NCBI RefSeq assembly: GCF_964204865.1 | Contig: NC_135255.1 | Coordinates: 13,702,001-13,766,000 of the forward strand | Source of the DNA: Styela clava | Taxonomy: Eukaryota | Direction of reading: 5' to 3' | DNA: 64,000 nt | In this document: positions 1,105 to 12,494 of the stretch, piece after piece | Layout: the number at the start of each line of letters is the position of its first letter | Numbering within the stretch: the first letter of the stretch is position 1 | The notes under the pieces: generated by a model | Seen by the model: only the letters and a program-made list of their open reading frames with translations | Told to the model about the DNA's origin: nothing | Database searches by the model: none | Position numbers and translations under genes: made by a program

Positions 1105-1722
1105 GCTCGATAACGCTAGCATTTTTATATTTTATAGGTGGGAAAGTGACGTAATAAATTTAGTATGATTTTGTAATTGAAACAGTCCACTATTTCCCGA
1201 ACCCGGCTTTATTCAAAAACCAGTTGTTTTGCAAAAAACTGACTTTTTCATTTTCAATTGCTAAAACAAAAGGACAATGCGATCGAATATTATGAATTAT
1301 GATGTAATTGACAGCATATCAGATGAAGATCTATTTGATATTTATCGAAGGAGGCGTTGGTTATGTGCAAATGTTGTCTTATACTTAATTACCCCCTAAA
1401 GACCCATATTGTTGCCATGGAACGGGATGGTGACGTCAAAGCTCCCTGTGCAAATCAAAATTGTGCAATAAACTTTGAATGAACTTATGCTTTAAGTGTT
1501 TTGGCTCTCGATACCGATAGATGAAGAGAGAAAGAGAGATAACAACTTCCGACTGCACCGTGACAGGCAAGAATGAAATTTTATGATTGTTCAATGATTA
1601 ACTTTAACGTTATATGATTTTGATAGAATTTAAAGGGCACGAGGCAGCTCAAAATGCACATTTCGCACCTGGCGTTTGACGAATACACAGTTTTAGTTGC
1701 TAAGCTATCCCAACCTTGAGTA

Positions 1723-4700
1723 ATGCAGTCTAGCGTTGTCTACAGTCTGACAATATGTGCTATTCTACTAACAGCGATTTTAATAACCATCATCGTCGTG
1801 CTGGTGCCTGAATCGGATACACGTATGTTATTTGTATTTTTATTATAATGTAAACATTTGATGTGTCGTGAGTGTTAGCGCTCGCTTTTAAATGTAGTAA
1901 TATGCAAGCCCTTACCGGCGTGGTATTCGAAATCTCGAATACATTTATATTTTTGAGATTTGCTCACATATTTGAAGAATTATCTCAGATACTTCCGAAC
2001 GATAATTCCACGAAAAGTAGCGTGCGATTTTCTTCTGTCATACTGTACCGCCAATTGTTCTAGTTAGTTATAAACTGACTTTATTTTAGTTGCGGCTCCT
2101 CCGTCATGCTCTGCTTATCCTTGCGACGCAACGTGTGACATGAAGGTATCGCCATGCAATGGTCTCGTATTTGAAGAAAACTTTGATACATTCGACTTGC
2201 AAAGATGGCAACACGAAATCACAATGTCTGGAGGAGGAAACTGGGAATTTCAATTTTACACCAACAATAGGACAAACAGTTACGTCCGTGACAACACGCT
2301 CTTCATCAAACCGGTAAAATTTTCAAACAACGACCATACTTGTCGTATTTTGAATAGATTTCGTAACGGTTCGCTGTAATTCAGTCGTAACGTAGAAAAC
2401 AAATGTATAAATCGAACTGAACATCCATTGTCATAGTAATTTAGGGCGAAAGTATTACATTCATAAGACTGCTCTTTATTTTTTATTTACTTTGAAGTTT
2501 TAAATATTTTTCAATTCTGACATTGTTCTAATATTCACTACTATTGTTTTTACAAATTCATTCGACTCATTTTTTTATTATATTTTCGATTCTCTGTAGA
2601 TTTAGGTTCTATAGATATAGACAGATCGTAGACACTATTGCAACCTTCAATACAAACAAAAATGTTTAGACACTGACCGCAGATCACTACGGAGAATCGT
2701 TTTTGTCGTCTGGCGTTCTTGATCTATGGGGAGGAAGTCCTGCCGATTTCTGCACTGGAAATGCATTTTGGGGTTGTCAACGTACCGGAACTCCAGATAA
2801 CTACATCAACCCTGTACAATCAGCCAGGTAAAATATAGAATACATTTTTCAAATTCTGATTGGACGATACATGATCCGCGACGACGTCTAACCCTCTGAT
2901 GTCACGTATTTTGATGATTACTAGTGATAGCATGGGGTGTGAAATTCAATAAAGCAACCTCGTTTTTTGTTCGCTATCTACCCCATGGGGTGGGATAAAT
3001 TTCGCATGTGCCATATTTGACCCTCCATGCATTCACGGAAGAACGTCACTATAGCTTTTTTTAGGAAGCAATTACAGGCAAAACGAGTATAAAGTATGAA
3101 AATAAACAATTATGACTTTTAGTAACCACTTTTGTATATTTTGTCTAGCCTGAGATGTCCAAATCAGATTCAAATTGTTTGAAATTATATTTTCAGCAAT
3201 ATGTTGATCGAAAATAATCTAAAATTAGCAAATCTGAACAATTTGAATATATATTAGAAATTAAAAAGAATTTATTCAAGTGAATGCTATCGATGAAATT
3301 CCCCCAAAACAGTTTTGAGATTGTCTCATGCAAAGATATACACCACATTTTGCACAGTTCATGTTGCTTTTCATCGGACATCCCCTCTTTCTGCAATGGA
3401 TTCTATCACCAATGCCCTTCTTCATCGAAACGCGCATCCATTGGTGGAAGAATACTACTTGCAGCTTTTTTTGGTGTTGATGGGAGATCACTATCAATAC
3501 TTGGTCGACCACGGCAAAGTCCTAACTTGGCACTATGTACTGACATGTAGAGATTTCAGTGCGGAAATCTTTTATTGGAAGCGGATTACAAGAGTTGTAC
3601 TCTATTGTAAAAAAAGCCATGAATTGACAATAATTAATAGGTACCGAGATCTAAATCTAAAAACAGTGTTTCTTCACGCCTATGCACTTATTTCAGTATT
3701 CAAGTACATTTTAATTTGCGTTCAAACTATCATGTCATAACCAAAATGACTTAATAATATTAAAAAACTAACAACAACCAACTACTAAACCTTGGTTTAA
3801 CCTCGCAGGTGACAATTTAGCAGCTAGTCTACTGGCTTAGAAGTCAAATGGGGTTTAAAAATTTTACTTATCAAAATGTCGAAACTAATTGCCAAGGGCT
3901 ACAGGAAACAACCCAGATTTTTTTGATGGCTGGATTTGAGAATAACCGAGTAATTAAATACTAATATCTAAATAAATACTTATATAAACGGTATTCCGAA
4001 CTAAAAATACTCAATTACTGAACATATGAAAACCTTCACGCCAGTGAATCAAGAAAACACAGCCTGAGCACTTAAAATTTTATTCCCCCAAATGCATGAT
4101 GTGCCAAATTTGTCACACGCATTACCACCTAAATATTTCGAAATGCTGAAGAAATAGTTAAAAACTGCTAAGCTAGGCCTCTTCCTTGCTAATACCCCCA
4201 CTATTACGAATTATCTCCTATTATCTCCTCCGTTTATTGCACAATAGAGAGAATGCGTTCCAGATGCAAAGAATCTACGTTACTCAATAGCATAACCAAG
4301 TGGACCAATATAAAAAACAACACGTGACCCAAAAGAGATGTTTTGAATTTGACCCGCCATGCATTAAAGCGCTAATAATATGCGGGAGTATTGACACGGA
4401 ATAATAGCGTGTTAAATTAGTCAAATTCATTTGTTCTCATATATGGGCGCGATTGATATGTGCATTTTTTTACTCAAAATGTCATTTTACTTGCAATCGC
4501 ACGAATCTTATATATTCAGTAGCGTAATAGACATTTCATATTCAGAATACGTTCTGTGAATTCATTTGCGATCCAATACGGACGAATTGAAGTTGTGGCT
4601 AAGATGCCTAGTGGGGACTGGTTGTGGCCTGCGATATGGATGTTACCCAGGTGAGAATTTAAAACATTTATATATGTTATTTTAACACTTGAGGAGAGTG

Positions 4701-7455
4701 CTCGTGTTTGAACTTTGAACTTTTTGAAAGTCTTTATATCTACTTCGACAACCATTACAAAATCGATGGTCATATGAGCATGCTTGAGACGTATGCCTGT
4801 AGACGCTCAATGCGAGACTGAGATGGGTTTTAAAATATGACCCAAGTATCAACGTCACACTGGCAGATATTAGAAATCTTGAATTTGTCACCAAAGGTGC
4901 ATCAACTTTGGATTTGGAGCTGGAGCAGTAATGGCTCAGGATTTGGTGCTGTAGTAATTTTTTTCCCCCACTTCACAGTCTCGATGGAAAATATGGAGGT
5001 TAAACTATGAATATATATAATTGTATATCCTCAATTTTTGAGGACTACTGGCATGATAAGTAGAAAATCAAAATTCACACTTCAATTTGAAATGAAATTT
5101 TCCAATTGACGTTGGCCCTATATATTCGCGTAGTTATTGACTGTTTTTCATAAAGTTCAACCTTGTATGAATAATGCAATTACCTAACCACTCACGTTTT
5201 CATTGCCAAAAGTCAATAGGCATGCAATTCAACGTTGAAATGTTTTATCTATATCCACACTAATCTAAGTCTAAATAAATAAATACAAGAGAGTTATGAA
5301 TACATAAAAACAAATACCCTCTATATCGGTGCATAAATTGCGGACCATAATTAAAAAACATTCTAGAACTCAAGAAAGGTTTTCTAAATAGAAATATAGT
5401 AAAGTAACACACAATATCATTATGTAATTTTAATAAACCCTATAACGAGTTAACCAAATTAAAAATGAGGCCTGTTGCTTTGGAACGACCTGATGTCAAA
5501 TTTGAATTTACTTTAACAGAGACAATAGGTACGGAGGATGGCCAGCATCTGGAGAGATAGACATTATAGAATCAAGAGGTGAGTGAGTCCAAGCTTTTAC
5601 GTTATAATCCCAAATACGTTTTTCAATTTATTCGATTGCCATCTCACTATTTTGATATTATTGTTCGTTAATATTTAGTCATTCAAACAGGGGTTGCATT
5701 TTCTCTTACTTGGAAATACACGTCACATGATAATCCGAATGAAAGATACATATCATGAGGTACATAACGGGCGTTCATTTCACACTTATGTTACACTAAT
5801 GATTCTAATTTTGTCATCATTCTTTGTTTTTTAGGAAATATAAATCTCACAGATGCTGAAGGCGTTTCTAAAGGTCGTGACAATATGGGTATGACTCTAC
5901 ATTGGGGACCTTACTTTCCACTGAACGGATATCCAAAGACAACAATCGAAAGGTCTGTCATAAGCAGGAATATAAATTTTCGATAATGATTCGGTTTCTG
6001 TGGGACTAACTACTCATCCTTCTAAACGAAACGTTACAGAAATATATTTTAGCGTGCAGCAAGACTCTTGAATCACTTAGAATAAATTTTCGATTTATCG
6101 TTCTTTATTAGACGAAATCCTAATCTATAGACACACAGTTTAAGCATTCCACATTAGCTTCTTTCTTCTTTTCGTACTCAATGGCGTCCAATAATTTAAT
6201 TAATGTTCGAAATTCGAATCTGGTTGCGTTATAAATTTGCACCTAAATTATACATCAAAGAGCTTACAGAGTTTAATTGAATCTTCTCATCTTCGTGATA
6301 TTTTATTCCAAGTTTTCTTAACGTTATGTAAAGACGAGCAAAATTAAAAAATATAGAGAAAATATGAGCTGAATCATTAATTCCATTTCATTTATATACT
6401 ACAATAATATATATCTGGCACAGTCATCCGGCTTCGGGAACGTACGCATCGGCCTTTCACACATGGGTTGTTGATTGGACAGCAGAATATATAGATTTGT
6501 TTGTGGATGGTAAATTGCTGCGAAGAGTTGATCCGGGACCTGGAGGATTTTTCGATTATGGTGAATTTGAAAAAGAAGCACCGGGTATCGATAATCCATG
6601 GGCGAATTCTAACAACAAAATGACACCATTTGATCAAGAAGTAAGTTTTGGAAGTAATTTAACATGATAATAAAACATTCAGTTATTGCTCGTTTGTTTA
6701 GATTGTTTAATTATGGTTTATTCAGTATTTTCAACAATTATTTCTAGTTCTATATTCTCATAAATGTGGCTGTCGGCGGCACCAATGGATTTTTCCCAGA
6801 TTCTTGGATAAATGCACCTCGCGAAAAGCCATGGAAAAATGATTCACCAACGGCAATGAAAGATTTTTGGTTGAAAAAAGACGAATGGTGAGTAATTAAG
6901 TCATTCCCAATAATACCAAAATGTTGAAGAGCCTCAATGAATGTAATTTTCCTACCCGGAAACAATGAAGCGTGGGAGTATTCAGTTGTTAGTTATTAAT
7001 TAATAAAAAAAAACAGAGATGTAGAAAAGTTAGAAAGAAGTGAGTTAAATAGATATGAAACAGCGATAGTTCGCGGGACCAATTCCTCTACGCGAATGTC
7101 ATCGAAAAAGTCAGAGACAATTGAGATAAAAAAGAAATTTTTCGGAATCTATCTTTAGGTCTCAAATGCACAATATTTTTTCTGGTTTCCCGTATAGTGA
7201 ATATCGAGAATTCCAATATTTTTGGCTCATCGTGATCGTGACGAGTATATATATAAGTGTAGTAATTGTCAAAAGCTTGATGTTTAGTAAAAACTAAAAA
7301 AAAAATTAATTTGTCTATTAAAGTTAAATCAAAATGTATCGCCCCTATTAAATTTGTTTTTCTTTTACTATAGGTATCCATCATGGCAGCCAGACGTTGA
7401 CAATGGTGAGAACGCTGCTATGCAAGTCAGAAGTATTAAAGTTTGGGCTAAATAA
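1723..7455 (+). CDS. GH16 endo-beta-1,3-glucanase / beta-1,3-glucan-binding protein (LGBP/GNBP-like), 9 coding exons: 1723-1822, 2090-2313, 2670-2827, 4546-4650, 5520-5578, 5835-5952, 6424-6640, 6748-6887, 7374-7455
   Basis: Phase-consistent GT-AG exons give FEENFDTFDLQRWQHEITMSGGGNWEFQFY, YGRIEVVAKMPSGDWLWPAIWMLP, GGWPASGEIDIIESRG (intact ExDxxE catalytic motif), FHTWVVDW, PFDQEFYILINVAVGG and the end MQVRSIKVWAK*. Exon 1 encodes a hydrophobic N-terminus, MQSSVVYSLTICAILLTAILITIIVVLVP. Confidence 0.93.
2890..4375 (-). mobile_element. Degenerate piggyBac (PGBD-like) transposon remnant in GH16 intron 3; ends approximate
   Basis: Minus-strand fragments IVNSWLF, RGRPS...PPMDARFDEEGHW, then after a frameshift the C-terminal Cys-rich domain RIHCRKRGCPMKSNMNCAKCGVYLCMRQSQNCF (in ORF 3276-3512). 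Stops and frameshifts throughout. Terminal-like motif tttgacccgccatgcattaaagc near 4348-4370. Confidence 0.75.
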
Positions 7456-8196
7456 ATATGAAGTCGCTCCACCAGATAATTCATTTGTAAGTAATAATTG
7501 ATGTAAATGTCAACAACAACACACTAGTCGGGGATCGAAGACTACGCTGTTTCGGACGTCTCAACTTCATTTCACTGTAATCTTGGAAATCAACAAATGT
7601 TGTTGTAAATTACCTCAGAAACTTTTTCCCGATTATACATATTTACAAATGTATATAAATGGTAATAAATTATAAGTAAATACAGCATTCAATTTTTTTT
7701 CATATTTTTGTTGTTAAAAGTTTCCAGTGCAGCATTACAATTAGTCTTAATGATTTCTGGATATTTGATATCTGGATTTCTGATATCCAATAAAAGAATC
7801 AGTCAACTAGAAAACTTGAGAAGTTGTATTAGACACTGAAGCGAAAGGTACATAAAATGTCTATTTTAGAACCGTTGAAAATGTATGTACGGAGACTCGG
7901 GGAGTGCATTCTTATTCGTAAACCTTGTGTTGGGCTTCCATGATTCGTTAAGGCGGAAGTATATATATCATCATTCTATGAACAGTGTCAGTCAATAATC
8001 CTCATTTAGTCTATAATCAACCATGATGAAATAAATCAAACAATATTTAGTGGATAATTTCGATTAATAATTGACAGAAATTATGCAACTTATCCGTAAT
8101 GTTTCATTACACATAGCGATAAAAATTAAAACATGATGAGTACGTGATAGGAAGACGATATTTTAGTGTGGAGTTCAACGATAATAGAAGCGAAGA

Positions 8197-11100
8197 ATGA
8201 AGTCAGTCGTGGGATATAGCTTAATATTGAGCAGCATTGTGATTGCAGGAGTTGTTTCGTTGCTGCTTGTATTGTTGATGCCTTCATCTATTCCACGTAT
8301 GTTATTTTGTATGGTAATTTTTTTGAATATTTGTGAAATAATGTTCGATACATATTTCGGTGGGGAAAGTCACGTAGGCTATTTATGACAAGTCATATCA
8401 TTCGTTTTATCGGAAGCATATATATATTTTCTACAATAAGTCAAAGAAGAAATTTAAACCATGCCAACCCCAAATTTAGATGAATGTGGTTGGCGATAAT
8501 CACCTGAAGCTCTCTTCATTGGCATCGCCAGCAATAGAATGAAAATAGCATTGAAGGTACACTGGAAGTAACCGTACACAAAAATTAATATTTTGGAATA
8601 TTTATTTTTAAATGGGAAATTCACAAGCTGGAAACCCAATTTTTTCGATAATTTCCAACATTCCGAGAAATAGTTTAGAGGTTCAGTCTGAGCATCATAA
8701 TGAAAGGTCTTAAAATCAAGAATAGCCCACGAGAGTGGCAATGTTATCTGCTTAAGTCATTGCTTACGCCGAATTGCCTTCGCTTGCTTTTAGAACAACG
8801 TCGAACATGTGAGCCGAAATATTTTGATCAAGATCGTATGGTTTGTGTATGTAACTCAACATATTGCGATACACTCGATCCGCTTCCAGATTCATATCCT
8901 GAAGGATATATAATTATTTATACATCGAGTCAGAGTGGACTTCGTTTCAACGAGACATCGAATCAATTTCGCTCTCTATCGCAAAGTGATGTAGGTAAGG
9001 AATTAAATATTATTTGAATTGTTCATTTCCTAACATAGTCTATATATATGAGAGATGCACACAAATGTGGACACAAGGTCAAATGACTTAACCAGGGATG
9101 TGCAACAAGCGACCCGCGGGCCACAACTGACCCGACAGGCCCTTTAGTGTAGCCCGTATGAACACCTAAATTTTTTCTCATCTAGCATAAAATCGTAATC
9201 CGACAGTTTATGTTAAGAACTGTTATTAACAAGCTATGCGAAAACTTGAAATTTCAATTGTTTCGCTAAAATGTTAAATAACTAAAATTTTGCATTGTGA
9301 GAATATTTCAATTCATTCAACAAGACCCCGAACAACAACAATTAATCAAGTGCTCTTTTCCAGCCGCAGAACATTCGGCGTTTGTGTTTTATGAAGAGTT
9401 TTATCCTGGTTTTATCCCTTTTTGTGTAAATATGTATGTTATTGTTTCATTCAGCTACAATAACAGTCAATTCTGGTAAACGGTTGCAGACAATTAAAGG
9501 CTTCGGCGGTGCATTCACGGATGCTGCTGGAATAAATATTGCAAGCTTACCTCAACAGGCTCAAGAGAATTTATTGAGGTCATATTTTTCACCAGAGGGT
9601 AAGTTTATTGATATTTATGTACACCATAGGCTACGATCCTTTTGTGTGGTTAGAATTCAAAAGCTCGCAAACAGTATATGTATATAAATCATTTTGAACG
9701 GTTTAAAAAACGTGTATTGCTTGTTGATTTCAATTATAAATGTCAGTTTTCATAATTTTATGTATTATCTCTTGGTATTATAACATTTCTGTAACAAGGT
9801 CACTTCAACTTTTCCAGGTATCGAATATAACATGGGTCGAATTCCTATAGCAAGTTGTGATTTTTCAACTCGAGGATACACGTACAATGATTTCGAGAAT
9901 GATTTCGCCCTAACAAATTTTTCGTTAGCAAGTGAAGATTTTGTTTACAAAGTAATTTCATTTAAATAAGTTGATGTTAAATTTATAATCGACTGCTGTT
10001 GAAAATCTTTCGTTTCTTTACATCTTCGAAGATACCATACATAAAGAAGGCCGTGGCAATGAATAAAAGAAAGATGTCTTTTTATGCCAGCCCTTGGACA
10101 GCACCCGCTTGGATGAAAACAAACAATGACCTTATCGGAAAGGGAAGTTTGAAAGGGGAACCAGGTGGACCATACTATCACACTTGGGCTCTGTATTTTG
10201 CAAGGTATTGGGACCTCCTGAAGTATGCGCACCGAGATGGCGCACAACCTGAACTCAGGTTGTGTACCAGGTTAGGGTTCAGGTTGTGCGACATTTTAGT
10301 GCGCATACTTCAGGAGTACCAGGTATTGTTCATTTTAGTCAGTCGAGAATGGGGATAAGCTTACACTTCTTTCAAACTAATAGATCCTATTTATGAAAAA
10401 CTAACATTTCGATCCACGTGTTTATTATTATATTTCAAGTGTACAGTAATTGAAATCGCTACAATAACTTCTTTCTGTAATTATGTAATAGATTCATCGA
10501 ACACGTTCTGTCTTGATTTTATGTATTATATAGATTTATAGAAGAATATACAAAGAACGGTGTAGACATCTGGGGATTAACAGCGCAAAATGAACCAAGT
10601 GCTGGGAATATTCAGAATTTTCCATTTCAGTGCATGGGATTCAGTGATATTCAGCAGAGAGACTTCATAAAACTAGATTTGGTAATAAATTAGTTCGTAT
10701 TCTTTTGTATACTGTTAATAAAACTATAAAAGAAAATACTGACATACAATTTCTCCCATTTTATTGAGTAGGGTCCAACACTAGAAAACCGAGGTCACGG
10801 CGACGTAACACTGATGATAATGGATGATCAAAGATTGTTGTTACCGGAATGGCCAAAGGTTGTCCTGAATGATTCAGTCGTGAACGACTATGTTGACGGA
10901 ATAGCAATTCATTGGTAAACTTAGTTTATAAATATCTGTATTTAATAAATACAGTTTTATTTGAATTAAAAGAATTCTATCTTGATCGACCGATTTTCGG
11001 AAGAATAGACCTCGCAAACAATTTTTCGCGTTGTGGAAGCCACTTTATCTTGCGTGTTATAGGCAAGCTTGACTTATTTCGAAGCACGTGTTACTAATTA

Positions 11101-12494
11101 CTAGTGACTTCACATTAGTTGTAGCTTGCAACTCTTTTAGTGATATGTTTTTCACTTATAATTCTTTGGAACTTCTTTCGAGAAACTAGTATAGCATATA
11201 GCAGTATGTATATATATAATCATTCCAACAATATAAAATTCATTTGTCACGACACCACTTTACGTTTAATTAATAAATGGCAGTGAAATTTTCCTTTTTT
11301 TTCATCCCCAGGTATATGGATTTCATGGTGCCACCACAACGACTAACGGAAACCCATGAATTGTTTCCTGATAAATTTATGCTTGCATCGGAGGCATGTG
11401 CAGGGGCAAATCCTTTAGCAAATAAAGGAGTGGTGATGGGCAGTTGGGAACGTGGCGAACGCTACAGTGACGATATTATTGAGGCAAGTTCATATTTCTA
11501 TTATTACTTATCGATCTTTAGATCGGTAAGTATGTTGATAGGTATTTGTCTGTTAGATGCACGCGATATCTCAAGAAGGCGTGGTTGAATCTGCTCCAAA
11601 TTTTGCATGTGCAATCATCATATCCCGGACCAGAAGCCTATGTCGTATATATATTAGCGAGTTATTACTTAATTAGGGATGGGACACGTGGTGTCACTAT
11701 AGAGTCATGAATCGAAACCGCAGTTTCGATCGATAAGTCTTCGGTCTCCGACCGATATTCTCGTTTATATTTTGAAAAGATTTCTGACTCTATAATAATT
11801 TTAAGTGTGAATTTGCAATCAGAATCAAGGTTTATATATGTGGAGCGCCAAATAAAGTATGTGGGAATGAGGACATCGCAAAACAATATTACAAATTTAC
11901 AGGATATAACAAACTACGTGAGTGGTTGGGTGGACTGGAACATTGCTCTTGATATGAGAGGGGGACCAAACTGGGTGAGAAACTTCGTTGATTCTCCAAT
12001 CATCGTCAACAAAGAATCCTACGAGTTTTACAAACAGCCCATGTTTTATCACATGGGTCATTTCAGGTTGTATATATATATATATTTATTTTCGTTGTAA
12101 TTTATATTCCAATATTCAACATGAAACTTGGCGAAAATTAGTCGAACTATACGCTATATATGAATAATATAACAACAAATCCTATGCAATTGAAACATTT
12201 TCCCCATATGACATTTCTTGTGTATTTTGAGTTGCGTCATAATTGATTATTTTTAATTTTAGCAAATTCGTCCCCGAAGGCTCAGTAAGGATTGAAAGCT
12301 TGGCGAATCAACTTCCATTTAATGTCAAACATGTTGCGTTTTTGAATCCAAATACTAACCAAATATCGTTAGTCGTTTTAAACAAGTCAGAGAACGATAT
12401 CATCATTACAGTTCGAGACTCGGCTTCTGGAGAAGTAGAAGACGTTTTGGAGAAAAGATCTATCAAAACATATGTTTGGTCACTTTATGTATGA
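8197..12494 (+). CDS. GBA1: Glucosylceramidase (glucocerebrosidase)-like GH30 hydrolase, 10 exons: 8197-8296, 8794-8994, 9455-9598, 9818-9951, 10032-10204, 10534-10681, 10772-10914, 11312-11483, 11903-12066, 12263-12494
   Basis: Motifs [54 protein letters not shown] (acid/base Glu), [13 protein letters not shown] (nucleophile Glu), [25 protein letters not shown] and [16 protein letters not shown]. Intron 8 has a GC donor. Orthology to GBA1 rather than a paralog is unproven. Confidence 0.93.
9093..9160 (+). mobile_element. Fragment of a hAT/Charlie-type MITE end in GBA intron 2
   Basis: cagggatgtgcaac...cgacccgcgggccaca...ggccc resembles the termini of the copies at 43981 and 45091-45355. Confidence 0.5.
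10211..10320. mobile_element. 110-bp palindromic MITE with an 8-bp TSD (aggtattg) that duplicates the GBA intron-5 donor
   Basis: Long imperfect inverted arms ctcctgaagtatgcgcac...cacaacctgaac and gttcaggttgtg...gtgcgcatacttcaggag. aggtattg occurs at 10203-10210 and 10321-10328. Internal ggttagggtt motif. Confidence 0.85.

What the first reader, a model, noticed from the sequence alone, without database searches (positions are those of the whole stretch)
1723..8310. Two unrelated glycoside hydrolases (GH16 and GH30) share an apparently homologous signal-anchor first exon
Seen: the first coding exons of GH16 (1723-1822) and GBA (8197-8296) are both exactly 100 nt (33 codons plus C, phase 1). 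They align without gaps, MQSSVVYSLTICAILLTAILITIIVVLVPESDT versus [33 protein letters not shown], with 11/33 identities including M.S.V.YSL and V.L.P.S. They end in near-identical donors (AC|gtatgttatttgtat versus AC|gtatgttattttgtat), and both ATGs have ttttag 26-30 nt upstream. Known: GH16 (beta-jelly roll) and GH30 (TIM barrel) share no ancestry, and human GBA1 has a cleaved signal peptide. Inference: a 5' exon, perhaps with its promoter, was locally duplicated and captured by the neighbouring gene. The ~21-residue hydrophobic stretch lacks an obvious AxA cleavage site and resembles a type II membrane anchor like those of gut brush-border glycosidases.
Basis: partly seen in the sequence, partly recalled or inferred. 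Interest (0 to 1): 0.88.

Follow-up and report, generated by a model that had tools for sequence, protein, structure and literature searches.

The report
Shared signal-anchor exon, two sea-squirt glycosidases
Two neighbouring, unrelated sugar-cleaving enzyme genes of the sea squirt Styela clava start with look-alike 100-base exons coding a membrane anchor. The likeness is real but old and patchy, so it is a modest example of exon sharing, not a recent copy of exon plus promoter.

Summary
The window is Styela clava chromosome DNA. Both first coding exons (1723-1822 and 8197-8296) are 100 nt and phase 1. They are the first exons of XP_039254431.2 (GH16) and XP_039254646.2 (GH30, a glucocerebrosidase paralogue I call GBA-B). 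An RNA contig confirms the GH16 exon 1 to exon 2 joint.

The likeness exceeds chance but is uneven.
- Coding identity is 50/99 nt (P=2e-4 under codon shuffles kept within the n, h and c regions).
- Amino-acid identity is 11/33 (P=0.02).
- The only strong DNA signal is a 62-nt patch across the exon 1/intron 1 boundary. It matches 27/36 in register, against a best of 20 among 6,816 other GT sites in the window.
- There is no likeness upstream, in the first 75 nt of the exon at DNA level, or in the rest of intron 1.

The GBA-B anchor is shared with Clavelina and Ciona. A second tunicate GH16 isoform has a 33-residue anchor even closer to the Styela GBA-B anchor (14/33).

Best reading (about 0.55): one signal-anchor exon was copied between the two genes through compatible phase-1 introns, without a promoter, and a junction patch was later homogenised. 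Chance plus shared constraint keeps about 0.2.

This is a new member of a known kind, of moderate interest.

The parts
1723..1822 (+). GH16 gene, first coding exon. It is 100 nt and phase 1, and codes a 33-residue N-terminal hydrophobic signal-anchor.
   Evidence: Sequence. It is the first exon of XP_039254431.2. The RNA contig of run X1 covers 1674-1822 and joins to 2090. The 19-residue hydropathy is 3.09.
8197..8296 (+). GH30 (GBA-B) gene, first coding exon. It is 100 nt and phase 1, and codes a 33-residue N-terminal hydrophobic signal-anchor.
   Evidence: Sequence. It is the first exon of XP_039254646.2. Hydropathy is 2.94. No RNA was laid on it.
1799..1860 (+). Junction patch, GH16 copy: the last 24 nt of exon 1 plus the first 38 nt of intron 1. 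This is the only stretch with strong DNA likeness to the GBA copy.
   Evidence: The local alignment scores 23, against 9.7 (sd 1.8) for shuffles. It is the best non-self hit in the whole window on both strands. It matches 27/36 in register at the GT.
8273..8333 (+). Junction patch, GBA-B copy.
   Evidence: It includes the 14-mer CACGTATGTTATTT, which occurs 8 times in the genome.
2090..2313 (+). GH16 exon 2, with a phase-1 acceptor. It codes the Cys-rich linker and the start of the GH16 domain.
   Evidence: RNA joints in 4 runs. It matches a solved GH16 laminarinase, 4bow, at E=2.5e-5. The paralogue P0297 also has a phase-1 intron at the equivalent place.
8794..8994 (+). GBA-B exon 2, with a phase-1 acceptor. 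It codes the start of the mature glucocerebrosidase-like sequence.
   Evidence: The spliced model reproduces XP_039254646.2. tblastn result.
1723..7455 (+). GH16 gene coding span, 9 exons: 1723-1822, 2090-2313, 2670-2827, 4546-4650, 5520-5578, 5835-5952, 6424-6640, 6748-6887, 7374-7455.
   Evidence: All 8 introns are seen as GT..AG joints in RNA contigs. The translation equals XP_039254431.2, and the catalytic motif EIDIIE lies at residue 208.
8197..12494 (+). GBA-B (GH30) gene coding span, 10 exons: 8197-8296, 8794-8994, 9455-9598, 9818-9951, 10032-10204, 10534-10681, 10772-10914, 11312-11483, 11903-12066, 12263-12494.
   Evidence: Pfam PF02055 and PF17189 match the exons. The translation equals XP_039254646.2.
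1691..1696 (+). ttttag, 26 nt before the GH16 ATG. It may be an acceptor; its use is not shown.
   Evidence: Sequence. RNA contig X1 starts at 1674, upstream of it, and carries no loose leader.
8161..8166 (+). ttttag, 30 nt before the GBA-B ATG. It may be an acceptor; not tested.
   Evidence: Sequence.

Best explanation
The two first exons are copies of one signal-anchor exon that passed between two neighbouring, otherwise unrelated glycosidase genes. Each gene keeps a phase-1 intron directly in front of its catalytic part. Any 5' exon that ends in phase 1 can therefore be spliced on in frame.

Only the exon and its donor region were transferred, not a promoter. The anchor is present in the GBA-B orthologues of Clavelina and Ciona, and a same-sized anchor heads a GH16 isoform of another tunicate.

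Since the transfer the hydrophobic core has drifted, constrained only to stay hydrophobic. The N-terminal motif (M-x-S-x-V-x-Y-S-L) and the Pro-x-Ser end were kept at protein level. A patch of about 62 nt across the exon/intron boundary either stayed alike or was made alike again by a short gene conversion between the neighbours.

Functionally, the exon supplies ER targeting. It probably also supplies an uncleaved N-terminal (type II) membrane anchor, which would hold an active GH16 beta-1,3-glucanase and an active GH30 beta-glucosidase-type enzyme on a membrane.

Shown: the exon structure, the likeness and where it lies, the conservation of the anchors, and the intact catalytic motifs. Inferred: the transfer itself, its direction and date, the conversion, and the membrane topology.
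For: - Both exons are the annotated first exons, with equal length and phase. The GH16 joint is seen in RNA.
- In-register identity exceeds region-structured codon shuffles: 50/99 nt, P=2e-4; 11/33 aa, P=0.021.
- BLASTP of the pair gives E=6e-4 for the single comparison.
- The junction context matches 27/36. The best of 6,816 other GT sites is 20, and the best of the 32 other GTATGT sites is 19.
- The local alignment scores 23, against 9.7 (sd 1.8) for shuffles, and is the top non-self hit in the window.
- The shared 14-mer occurs 8 times in 377 Mb. The 6 other copies do not follow an anchor ORF.
- None of the 15 other donors in the two genes is GTATGT or ends in CAC.
- Among 38 anchor-like N-termini of GH16 and GH30 proteins from many animals, five tunicate anchors rank each other at or near the top. 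They are Styela GH16, GH16 isoform P0272, and the Styela, Clavelina and Ciona GBA-B anchors. The top four hits of the Styela GH16 anchor are three GBA-B anchors plus P0272.
- P0272 matches the Styela GBA-B anchor at 14/33 in register (P=0.0015). It departs from its CBM39-bearing isoform P0122 at about residue 32-33, beside the Styela exon boundary.
- The paralogue gene P0297 also has a phase-1 intron before the linker exon.
Against: - Neither exon finds the other in genome-wide DNA or protein searches at E<=10.
- The first 75 nt of the exon give no DNA signal (score 7 against 6.9). Neither do the 600 nt upstream or the rest of intron 1.
- Much of the nucleotide identity is the second-position T of hydrophobic codons.
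- True orthologous anchors are no more alike than the cross-family pair (Styela and Clavelina GBA-B, 9/33, P=0.12). The protein signal therefore sits near the noise floor.
- Each exon has a plausible vertical origin. GBA-B exon 1 appears to sit where the ancestral signal-peptide exon of GBA lies; that placement rests on my memory of human GBA1 exon structure, not on a test here. Anchored GH16 isoforms exist in sea urchins and acorn worms.
- The Clavelina short GH16 has an unrelated N-terminus that looks cleavable.
- The finding was picked post hoc from a very large scan.
Confidence: 0.55

Rival explanations
1. Independent exons, alike by shared constraint and chance. GBA-B exon 1 is the ancestral GBA signal-peptide exon whose hydrophobic core grew longer. 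GH16 exon 1 is an old GH16 anchor exon. Equal length, phase 1, hydrophobic codons, a helix-breaking proline and a small-residue tail follow from the common job. The donor match is coincidence.
For: - Phase 1 after signal sequences is a general bias (PMC1626468).
- 24 of the 51 identical bases are second codon positions.
- Orthologous anchors are no more alike than the cross-family pair.
- No likeness upstream, in the first 75 nt at DNA level, or deeper in the intron.
- Genome-wide searches find only self.
- Anchored GH16 proteins occur in echinoderms and hemichordates.
Against: - The junction match of 27/36 stands 6 sd above all other GT sites. It is far above the other GTATGT sites.
- The 14-mer occurs only 8 times in the genome, and two of those copies sit at these two donors 6.5 kb apart.
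- Structured shuffles still give P=2e-4 for nucleotides.
- The tunicate anchors of both families rank each other at or near the top among 38 anchors.
Confidence: 0.2
2. Exons of separate origin that were only partly homogenised. A short ectopic gene conversion between the neighbouring genes overwrote about 60 nt at the exon 1/intron 1 boundary of one with the sequence of the other. The rest of the two exons is unrelated.
For: - The DNA likeness is confined to 1799-1860 and 8273-8333. It includes intron bases that should be free to drift.
- A 14-nt exact run sits in a pair that is otherwise about 45% identical.
- The genes lie 6.5 kb apart on the same strand.
Against: - Conversion normally needs prior homology to start.
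- Six of the first 9 residues are identical although their codons differ at synonymous sites. That points to an older protein-level relation outside the patch.
- The patch itself is only about 74% identical, so it is not very recent.
Confidence: 0.15
3. The junction patch is a shared functional element, not a trace of descent. It could be a splicing signal that compensates for the weak exon end (CAC instead of AG). It could also be an intronic control element that co-regulates the two neighbouring genes.
For: - Both exons end in a non-consensus CAC. Both use GTATGT plus a T-rich stretch, unlike the 15 other donors of the two genes.
Against: - Nothing tested here shows such an element.
- The other 6 genomic copies of the 14-mer are not at comparable exons.
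- It would not explain the in-register protein likeness.
Confidence: 0.05

Closest known systems
Exon shuffling of secretory signal-sequence exons through phase-1 introns (Tordai and Patthy; Vibranovski et al., as reviewed in PMC1626468)
   Same: A first exon that codes only the targeting sequence ends in phase 1. It is joined to unrelated mature-protein exons that start in phase 1.
   Different: Here the exon codes a long hydrophobic stretch that looks like an uncleaved anchor. The two recipient genes are direct neighbours. The strongest likeness lies at the donor junction, not along the whole exon.
Human 20q13 locus of WFDC, semenogelin and Kunitz (SPINT3-5) genes, judged homologous by gene organisation and location although their products are unalike (PMC3209443)
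   Same: Neighbouring genes code unrelated mature proteins behind a separate signal-sequence exon. Relatedness is argued from gene structure and position.
   Different: That locus holds many small, rapidly evolving secreted proteins. Here there are two large, conserved enzymes of different folds (GH16 and GH30), each with clear orthologues elsewhere. Only exon 1 is in question.
Membrane-anchored GH16 'beta-1,3-glucan-binding protein-like' isoforms of sea urchins and acorn worms (for example P0278 Lytechinus, P0477 Glandiceps)
   Same: An N-terminal hydrophobic anchor is followed by the same Cys-rich linker and an active-looking GH16 domain. The alternative forms carry a signal peptide plus a CBM39 domain.
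   Different: Those anchors follow a cytoplasmic tail of 26-60 residues. The Styela anchor starts 5 to 7 residues after the Met. Its closest look-alikes are GBA-B anchors, not these GH16 anchors.
Type II anchored brush-border glycosidases such as sucrase-isomaltase (own knowledge)
   Same: An uncleaved N-terminal signal anchor would hold a digestive glycosidase on the luminal face of a membrane.
   Different: No homology. Topology and tissue of expression are untested for the Styela proteins.

Membership tests
GH16 (beta-1,3-glucanase / beta-glucan-binding protein group) | Match to the GH16 domain profile | tested here: met
   The window protein P0296 carries PF00722 and PF26113 in the precomputed table. 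Exon 2 matches the solved GH16 endo-1,3-beta-glucanase 4bow at E=2.5e-5. Single exons were too short for Pfam and for the six-frame genome scan.
GH16 (beta-1,3-glucanase / beta-glucan-binding protein group) | Catalytic E-x-D-x-x-E motif | tested here: met
   EIDIIE lies at residues 208-213, coded in exon 5. That this motif is the catalytic one is established GH16 knowledge.
GH30 (glucosylceramidase family) | TIM-barrel and C-terminal beta-sandwich domain profiles | tested here: met
   PF02055 matches five of the window exons tested and PF17189 matches the last exon. The genome scan gives the same result.
GH30 (glucosylceramidase family) | Acid/base and nucleophile glutamates | tested here: met
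   The NEP motif lies at about residue 270 and the SEAC motif at about residue 374. Their equivalence to human E235 and E340 is from my own knowledge, not aligned here.
Shared 5' exon by exon duplication or shuffling | Compatible intron phase at the junction in both genes | tested here: met
   Both exons end in phase 1 and both second exons begin in phase 1. The GH16 paralogue P0297 has a phase-1 intron at the same place.
Shared 5' exon by exon duplication or shuffling | Sequence likeness of the exons beyond composition | tested here: inconclusive
   Structured shuffles give P=2e-4 for nucleotides and 0.021 for amino acids. The tunicate anchors rank each other at or near the top among 38 anchors. 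However, there is no DNA signal in the first 75 nt, and orthologous anchors score no better.
Shared 5' exon by exon duplication or shuffling | Likeness extending into flanking non-coding DNA | tested here: inconclusive
   Met for the first 38 nt or so of intron 1. Not met for the 600 nt upstream or the rest of the intron.
   The upstream 600 nt score 15, against 13.7 (sd 1.8) for shuffles. In-register identity upstream is 15-40% per 20-nt block, averaging about 25%.
Type II signal anchor | N-terminal hydrophobic segment of about 20 or more residues | tested here: met
   The 19-residue Kyte-Doolittle means are 3.09 and 2.94. These are the two strongest ATG-led hydrophobic ORFs in the window.
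Type II signal anchor | No signal-peptidase cleavage; N-terminus in the cytosol | not testable with these tools
   No signal-peptide or topology predictor was available. By eye, the GBA tail (P-S-S-I-P) lacks a good -3/-1 pair. The GH16 tail (S-D-T, then L-A-A) could be cleaved.
Spliced-leader trans-splice acceptor (ttttag before each ATG) | RNA that starts with a leader joined at the AG | tested here: inconclusive
   The only contig reaching GH16 exon 1 begins at 1674, upstream of the ttttag, with no loose leader. Contigs cannot show RNA ends.

The most novel reading that the evidence does not exclude
In tunicates a 33-codon signal-anchor exon acts as a portable cassette. Passing through phase-1 introns, it has turned a secreted or lysosomal-type glycosidase into a membrane-bound one more than once. 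The cases would be the GH16 short forms and the conserved GBA paralogue. Where the two recipient genes stay neighbours, as in Styela, the cassette is kept alike by gene conversion. The result would be a co-anchored two-enzyme unit for beta-glucan digestion.
Probability: 0.2. Interest if true: 0.6.

Novelty: new member of a known kind. Interest (0 to 1): 0.42.

Why it matters
If the exon was truly shared, this is a clean, datable animal example of how a targeting module moves between genes of unrelated folds and changes where an enzyme works. The example has both partners intact and adjacent. The same architecture is visible in other tunicates.

It also flags a tunicate glucocerebrosidase paralogue, the one that keeps the ancestral introns. 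That paralogue carries a membrane anchor in place of the usual cleaved signal peptide, which bears on what this enzyme does outside lysosomes.

If the likeness is mostly constraint, the case is a useful caution. Hydrophobic first exons can look homologous.

Tried and rejected
1. A dispersed family of this exon. Genome-wide DNA and protein searches with each exon found only the exon itself. The 6 other genomic copies of the shared 14-mer do not follow an anchor ORF. No other ATG-led ORF in the window resembles either exon; identities are 2-7 of 33.

2. A transposon origin of the patch. The same searches found no repeat family.

3. A copied promoter or 5'UTR. No likeness.

4. A third copy of the anchor exon inside the Styela CBM39-form GH16 gene on C5. 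The 360-nt intron before its linker exon holds no such ORF.

5. Decayed CBM39 exons upstream of the window gene, which would mark it as the parental locus. There are none in the 15.7 kb upstream.

From contig lengths alone, Clavelina GH16 and GBA-B share a 26.5 Mb record in one assembly but lie on different contigs in another. They are therefore probably linked but not adjacent.

7. RNA support for GBA exon 1.

8. Spliced-leader use of the ttttag sites. This stays undecided. A paper search gave nothing on Styela.

Exons were joined only inside a script, to check that they translate to database proteins. Whole-protein searches used database entries by id.


Full report
WHAT IS THERE

The window is Styela clava chromosome DNA (G000 contig C6, 24,297,679 nt). 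The two genes are RefSeq models on that same record.

The upstream gene has 9 exons over 1723-7455 and translates exactly to XP_039254431.2, a 400-aa GH16 protein annotated 'beta-1,3-glucan-binding protein-like'. It has an intact EIDIIE catalytic motif. The downstream gene has 10 exons over 8197-12494 and translates exactly to XP_039254646.2, a 536-aa GH30 glucosylceramidase-like protein. Pfam PF02055 and PF17189 match its exons.

RNA contigs from four runs in two studies show all eight GH16 introns as GT..AG joints. One contig (run X1) covers 1674-1822 and joins 1822 to 2090, so GH16 exon 1 is transcribed and spliced as proposed. GBA exon 1 rests on the RefSeq model only. The single read-laying run of 6,000 nt could not span both genes.

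THE OBSERVATION

Every stated fact is correct.
- Both exons are 100 nt, that is 33 codons plus C, so phase 1.
- Ungapped peptide identity is 11/33.
- Both end CAC|GTATGTTATTT.
- ttttag lies 26 and 30 nt before the ATGs.

IS IT MORE THAN CHANCE?

The exon body gives a moderate signal.
- Of the 51 identical bases, 24 are second codon positions, largely the T of hydrophobic codons. First positions match at 12/33 and third positions at 14/33.
- Shuffling codons freely gives P=1e-5 for 50/99 identical bases. Shuffling only within the n, h and c regions gives P=2e-4. For the 11 identical residues the values are 0.0017 and 0.021.
- BLASTP of the two peptides gives E=6e-4 for the single comparison.

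Genome-wide the likeness is invisible. Each exon, as DNA or protein, finds only itself at E<=10.

At DNA level the signal is concentrated in one place.
- A local alignment of 1799-1860 with 8273-8333 covers the last 24 nt of the exon and about 38 nt of the intron, at about 74% identity. It scores 23, against 9.7 (sd 1.8) for shuffled sequence.
- It is the best non-self hit of the GH16 exon region in the whole window on both strands. The next best scores 19.
- Aligned in register at the GT, the two donor contexts (-25..+11) agree at 27 of 36 places. The best of the 6,816 other GT sites in the window reaches 20 (mean 10.8, sd 2.6). The best of the 32 other GTATGT sites reaches 19.
- The shared 14-mer occurs 8 times in 377 Mb, the same count as its reversed control. 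The other six copies do not follow an anchor ORF.
- None of the 15 other donors of the two genes is GTATGT or follows CAC.

By contrast, three regions show nothing. They are the first 75 nt of the exon, the 600 nt upstream, and the rest of intron 1.

In the first nine residues six are identical (M, S, V, Y, S, L), while their codons differ at synonymous sites.

The picture is therefore a mosaic. There is a weak relation at protein level along the exon and a sharp DNA patch at the junction.

COMPARATIVE EVIDENCE

Glucocerebrosidase. Tunicates have two clades.
- A fast-evolving clade has cleaved signal peptides. Its Styela member on C3 is almost intronless.
- A conservative clade, here called GBA-B, holds the window gene together with Clavelina and Ciona proteins (SH-aLRT 88).
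- All three full-length GBA-B proteins start with a long hydrophobic anchor ending in a proline. Clavelina and Ciona share the run LLVVFLP. The GBA-B anchor therefore predates the split of these ascidians.

GH16.
- The window gene is sister to a Styela paralogue on C5 (P0297; signal peptide plus CBM39 domain; 78% identical). The pair sits inside a tunicate clade.
- That clade also holds proteins from an unnamed organism. In it a 398-aa form (P0272) and a 527-aa CBM39 form (P0122) are 98.9% identical from about residue 32-33 of the short form onward. That point lies beside the Styela exon 1 boundary, so they look like alternative first exons of one gene.
- The 33-residue anchor of P0272 matches the Styela GBA-B anchor at 14/33 in register (P=0.0015) and the Styela GH16 anchor at 8/33.

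Across families.
- Among 38 anchor-like N-termini collected from GH16 and GH30 proteins of many animals, five tunicate anchors rank each other at or near the top: two from GH16 and three from GBA-B. The top four hits of the Styela GH16 anchor are the three GBA-B anchors and P0272.
- Against this, true orthologous anchors are no more alike than the cross-family pair (Styela and Clavelina GBA-B, 9/33, P=0.12). The protein signal is therefore close to the noise floor.
- The Clavelina short GH16 has an unrelated N-terminus that looks cleavable.
- Anchored GH16 isoforms also exist in sea urchins and acorn worms. GH16 therefore has its own long history of N-terminal anchors.

The paralogue P0297 has a phase-1 intron just before its linker exon, and that intron holds no anchor ORF. 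No CBM39 remnants lie in the 15.7 kb upstream of the window gene.

INTERPRETATION

The junction patch is very unlikely to be coincidence. With the in-register protein likeness and the cross-species clustering, the best reading is that one signal-anchor exon was copied between these two genes through compatible phase-1 introns (about 0.55).

The direction is open.
- The age of the GBA-B anchor and the young GH16 paralogue favour GBA-B to GH16.
- The old GH16 anchors of other deuterostomes, and the resemblance of P0272 to both, favour GH16 to GBA-B in an early tunicate.

Either way the event is old. Neutral intron bases should then have drifted. The patch therefore needs a later short conversion between the neighbours, or local constraint on an unusually weak donor.

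The rivals are:
- independent exons made alike by common constraint plus chance (about 0.2);
- unrelated exons with only a conversion patch (about 0.15);
- a shared splicing or regulatory element (about 0.05).

Phase 1 is expected after signal-sequence exons (PMC1626468) and counts for little. The ttttag motifs are not evidence of homology. Tunicates use spliced-leader trans-splicing (own knowledge), but the one contig that reaches the GH16 motif runs through it.

FUNCTION

Both exons code about 22-24 hydrophobic residues straight after a 5-7 residue N-terminus (hydropathy 3.09 and 2.94). That length fits an uncleaved type II anchor. The GBA tail has no good cleavage pair. The GH16 tail might be cleaved. 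No predictor was available, so topology is inferred.

An older RefSeq version of the GBA protein starts three residues earlier (M-R-R). That would add positive charge on the cytosolic side.

COMPARISON WITH WHAT IS KNOWN

Exon shuffling of signal-sequence exons through phase-1 introns is an established idea (PMC1626468). Loci where neighbouring genes are judged homologous from gene organisation and location, although their products are unalike, are described (PMC3209443). This case is a new member of that kind. It involves two large conserved enzymes of different folds and an anchor in place of a cleaved signal.

VERDICT

Interest is moderate.

Noticed in passing
L001 (G000:C3:7117828-7121865), minus strand: The second Styela glucocerebrosidase (XP_039266841.1, with a cleaved signal peptide) is almost intronless. 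Residues 71-515 lie in one open frame. Residues 1-83 lie just upstream in another frame, so there is either a very short intron or a frame slip near residue 70. It looks like a retrogene that became the fast-evolving tunicate clade.
   Followed up: partly
window 11484-11902: GBA-B intron 8 has a GC donor (GAG|gcaagt), so it is a GC-AG intron. It is needed for the model to translate to the RefSeq protein.
   Followed up: yes
window about 6040-6090 (GH16 intron 6): A short stretch collects very high summed contig depth (144-211) in all four RNA runs, with many different loose ends. It looks like a piece of a repeated, widely transcribed element inside the intron.
   Followed up: no
window 8188-8196: The earlier RefSeq protein version (XP_039254646.1, 539 aa) starts M-R-R before the Met at 8197. 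In this assembly the codon at 8188-8190 is AAG, so the upstream start seems to be polymorphic.
   Followed up: partly
window 1720, 1731, 1770: The RNA contig of run X1 differs from the window at three places in or next to GH16 exon 1. The two inside the exon are synonymous third positions (codons 3 and 16).
   Followed up: yes
G000:C10:9619147-9631887 (L030-L034), G000:C5:24075001-24080495, and L009 on C17: Further GH16 genes in the genome: two tandem copies on C10, the CBM39-bearing paralogue on C5, and a weaker match on C17.
   Followed up: partly
window 3297-3740 (GH16 intron 3): A 141-aa open frame lies inside the long intron 3. A small contig of run X4 lies on 3308-3374. It may be a mobile-element remnant.
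   Followed up: no
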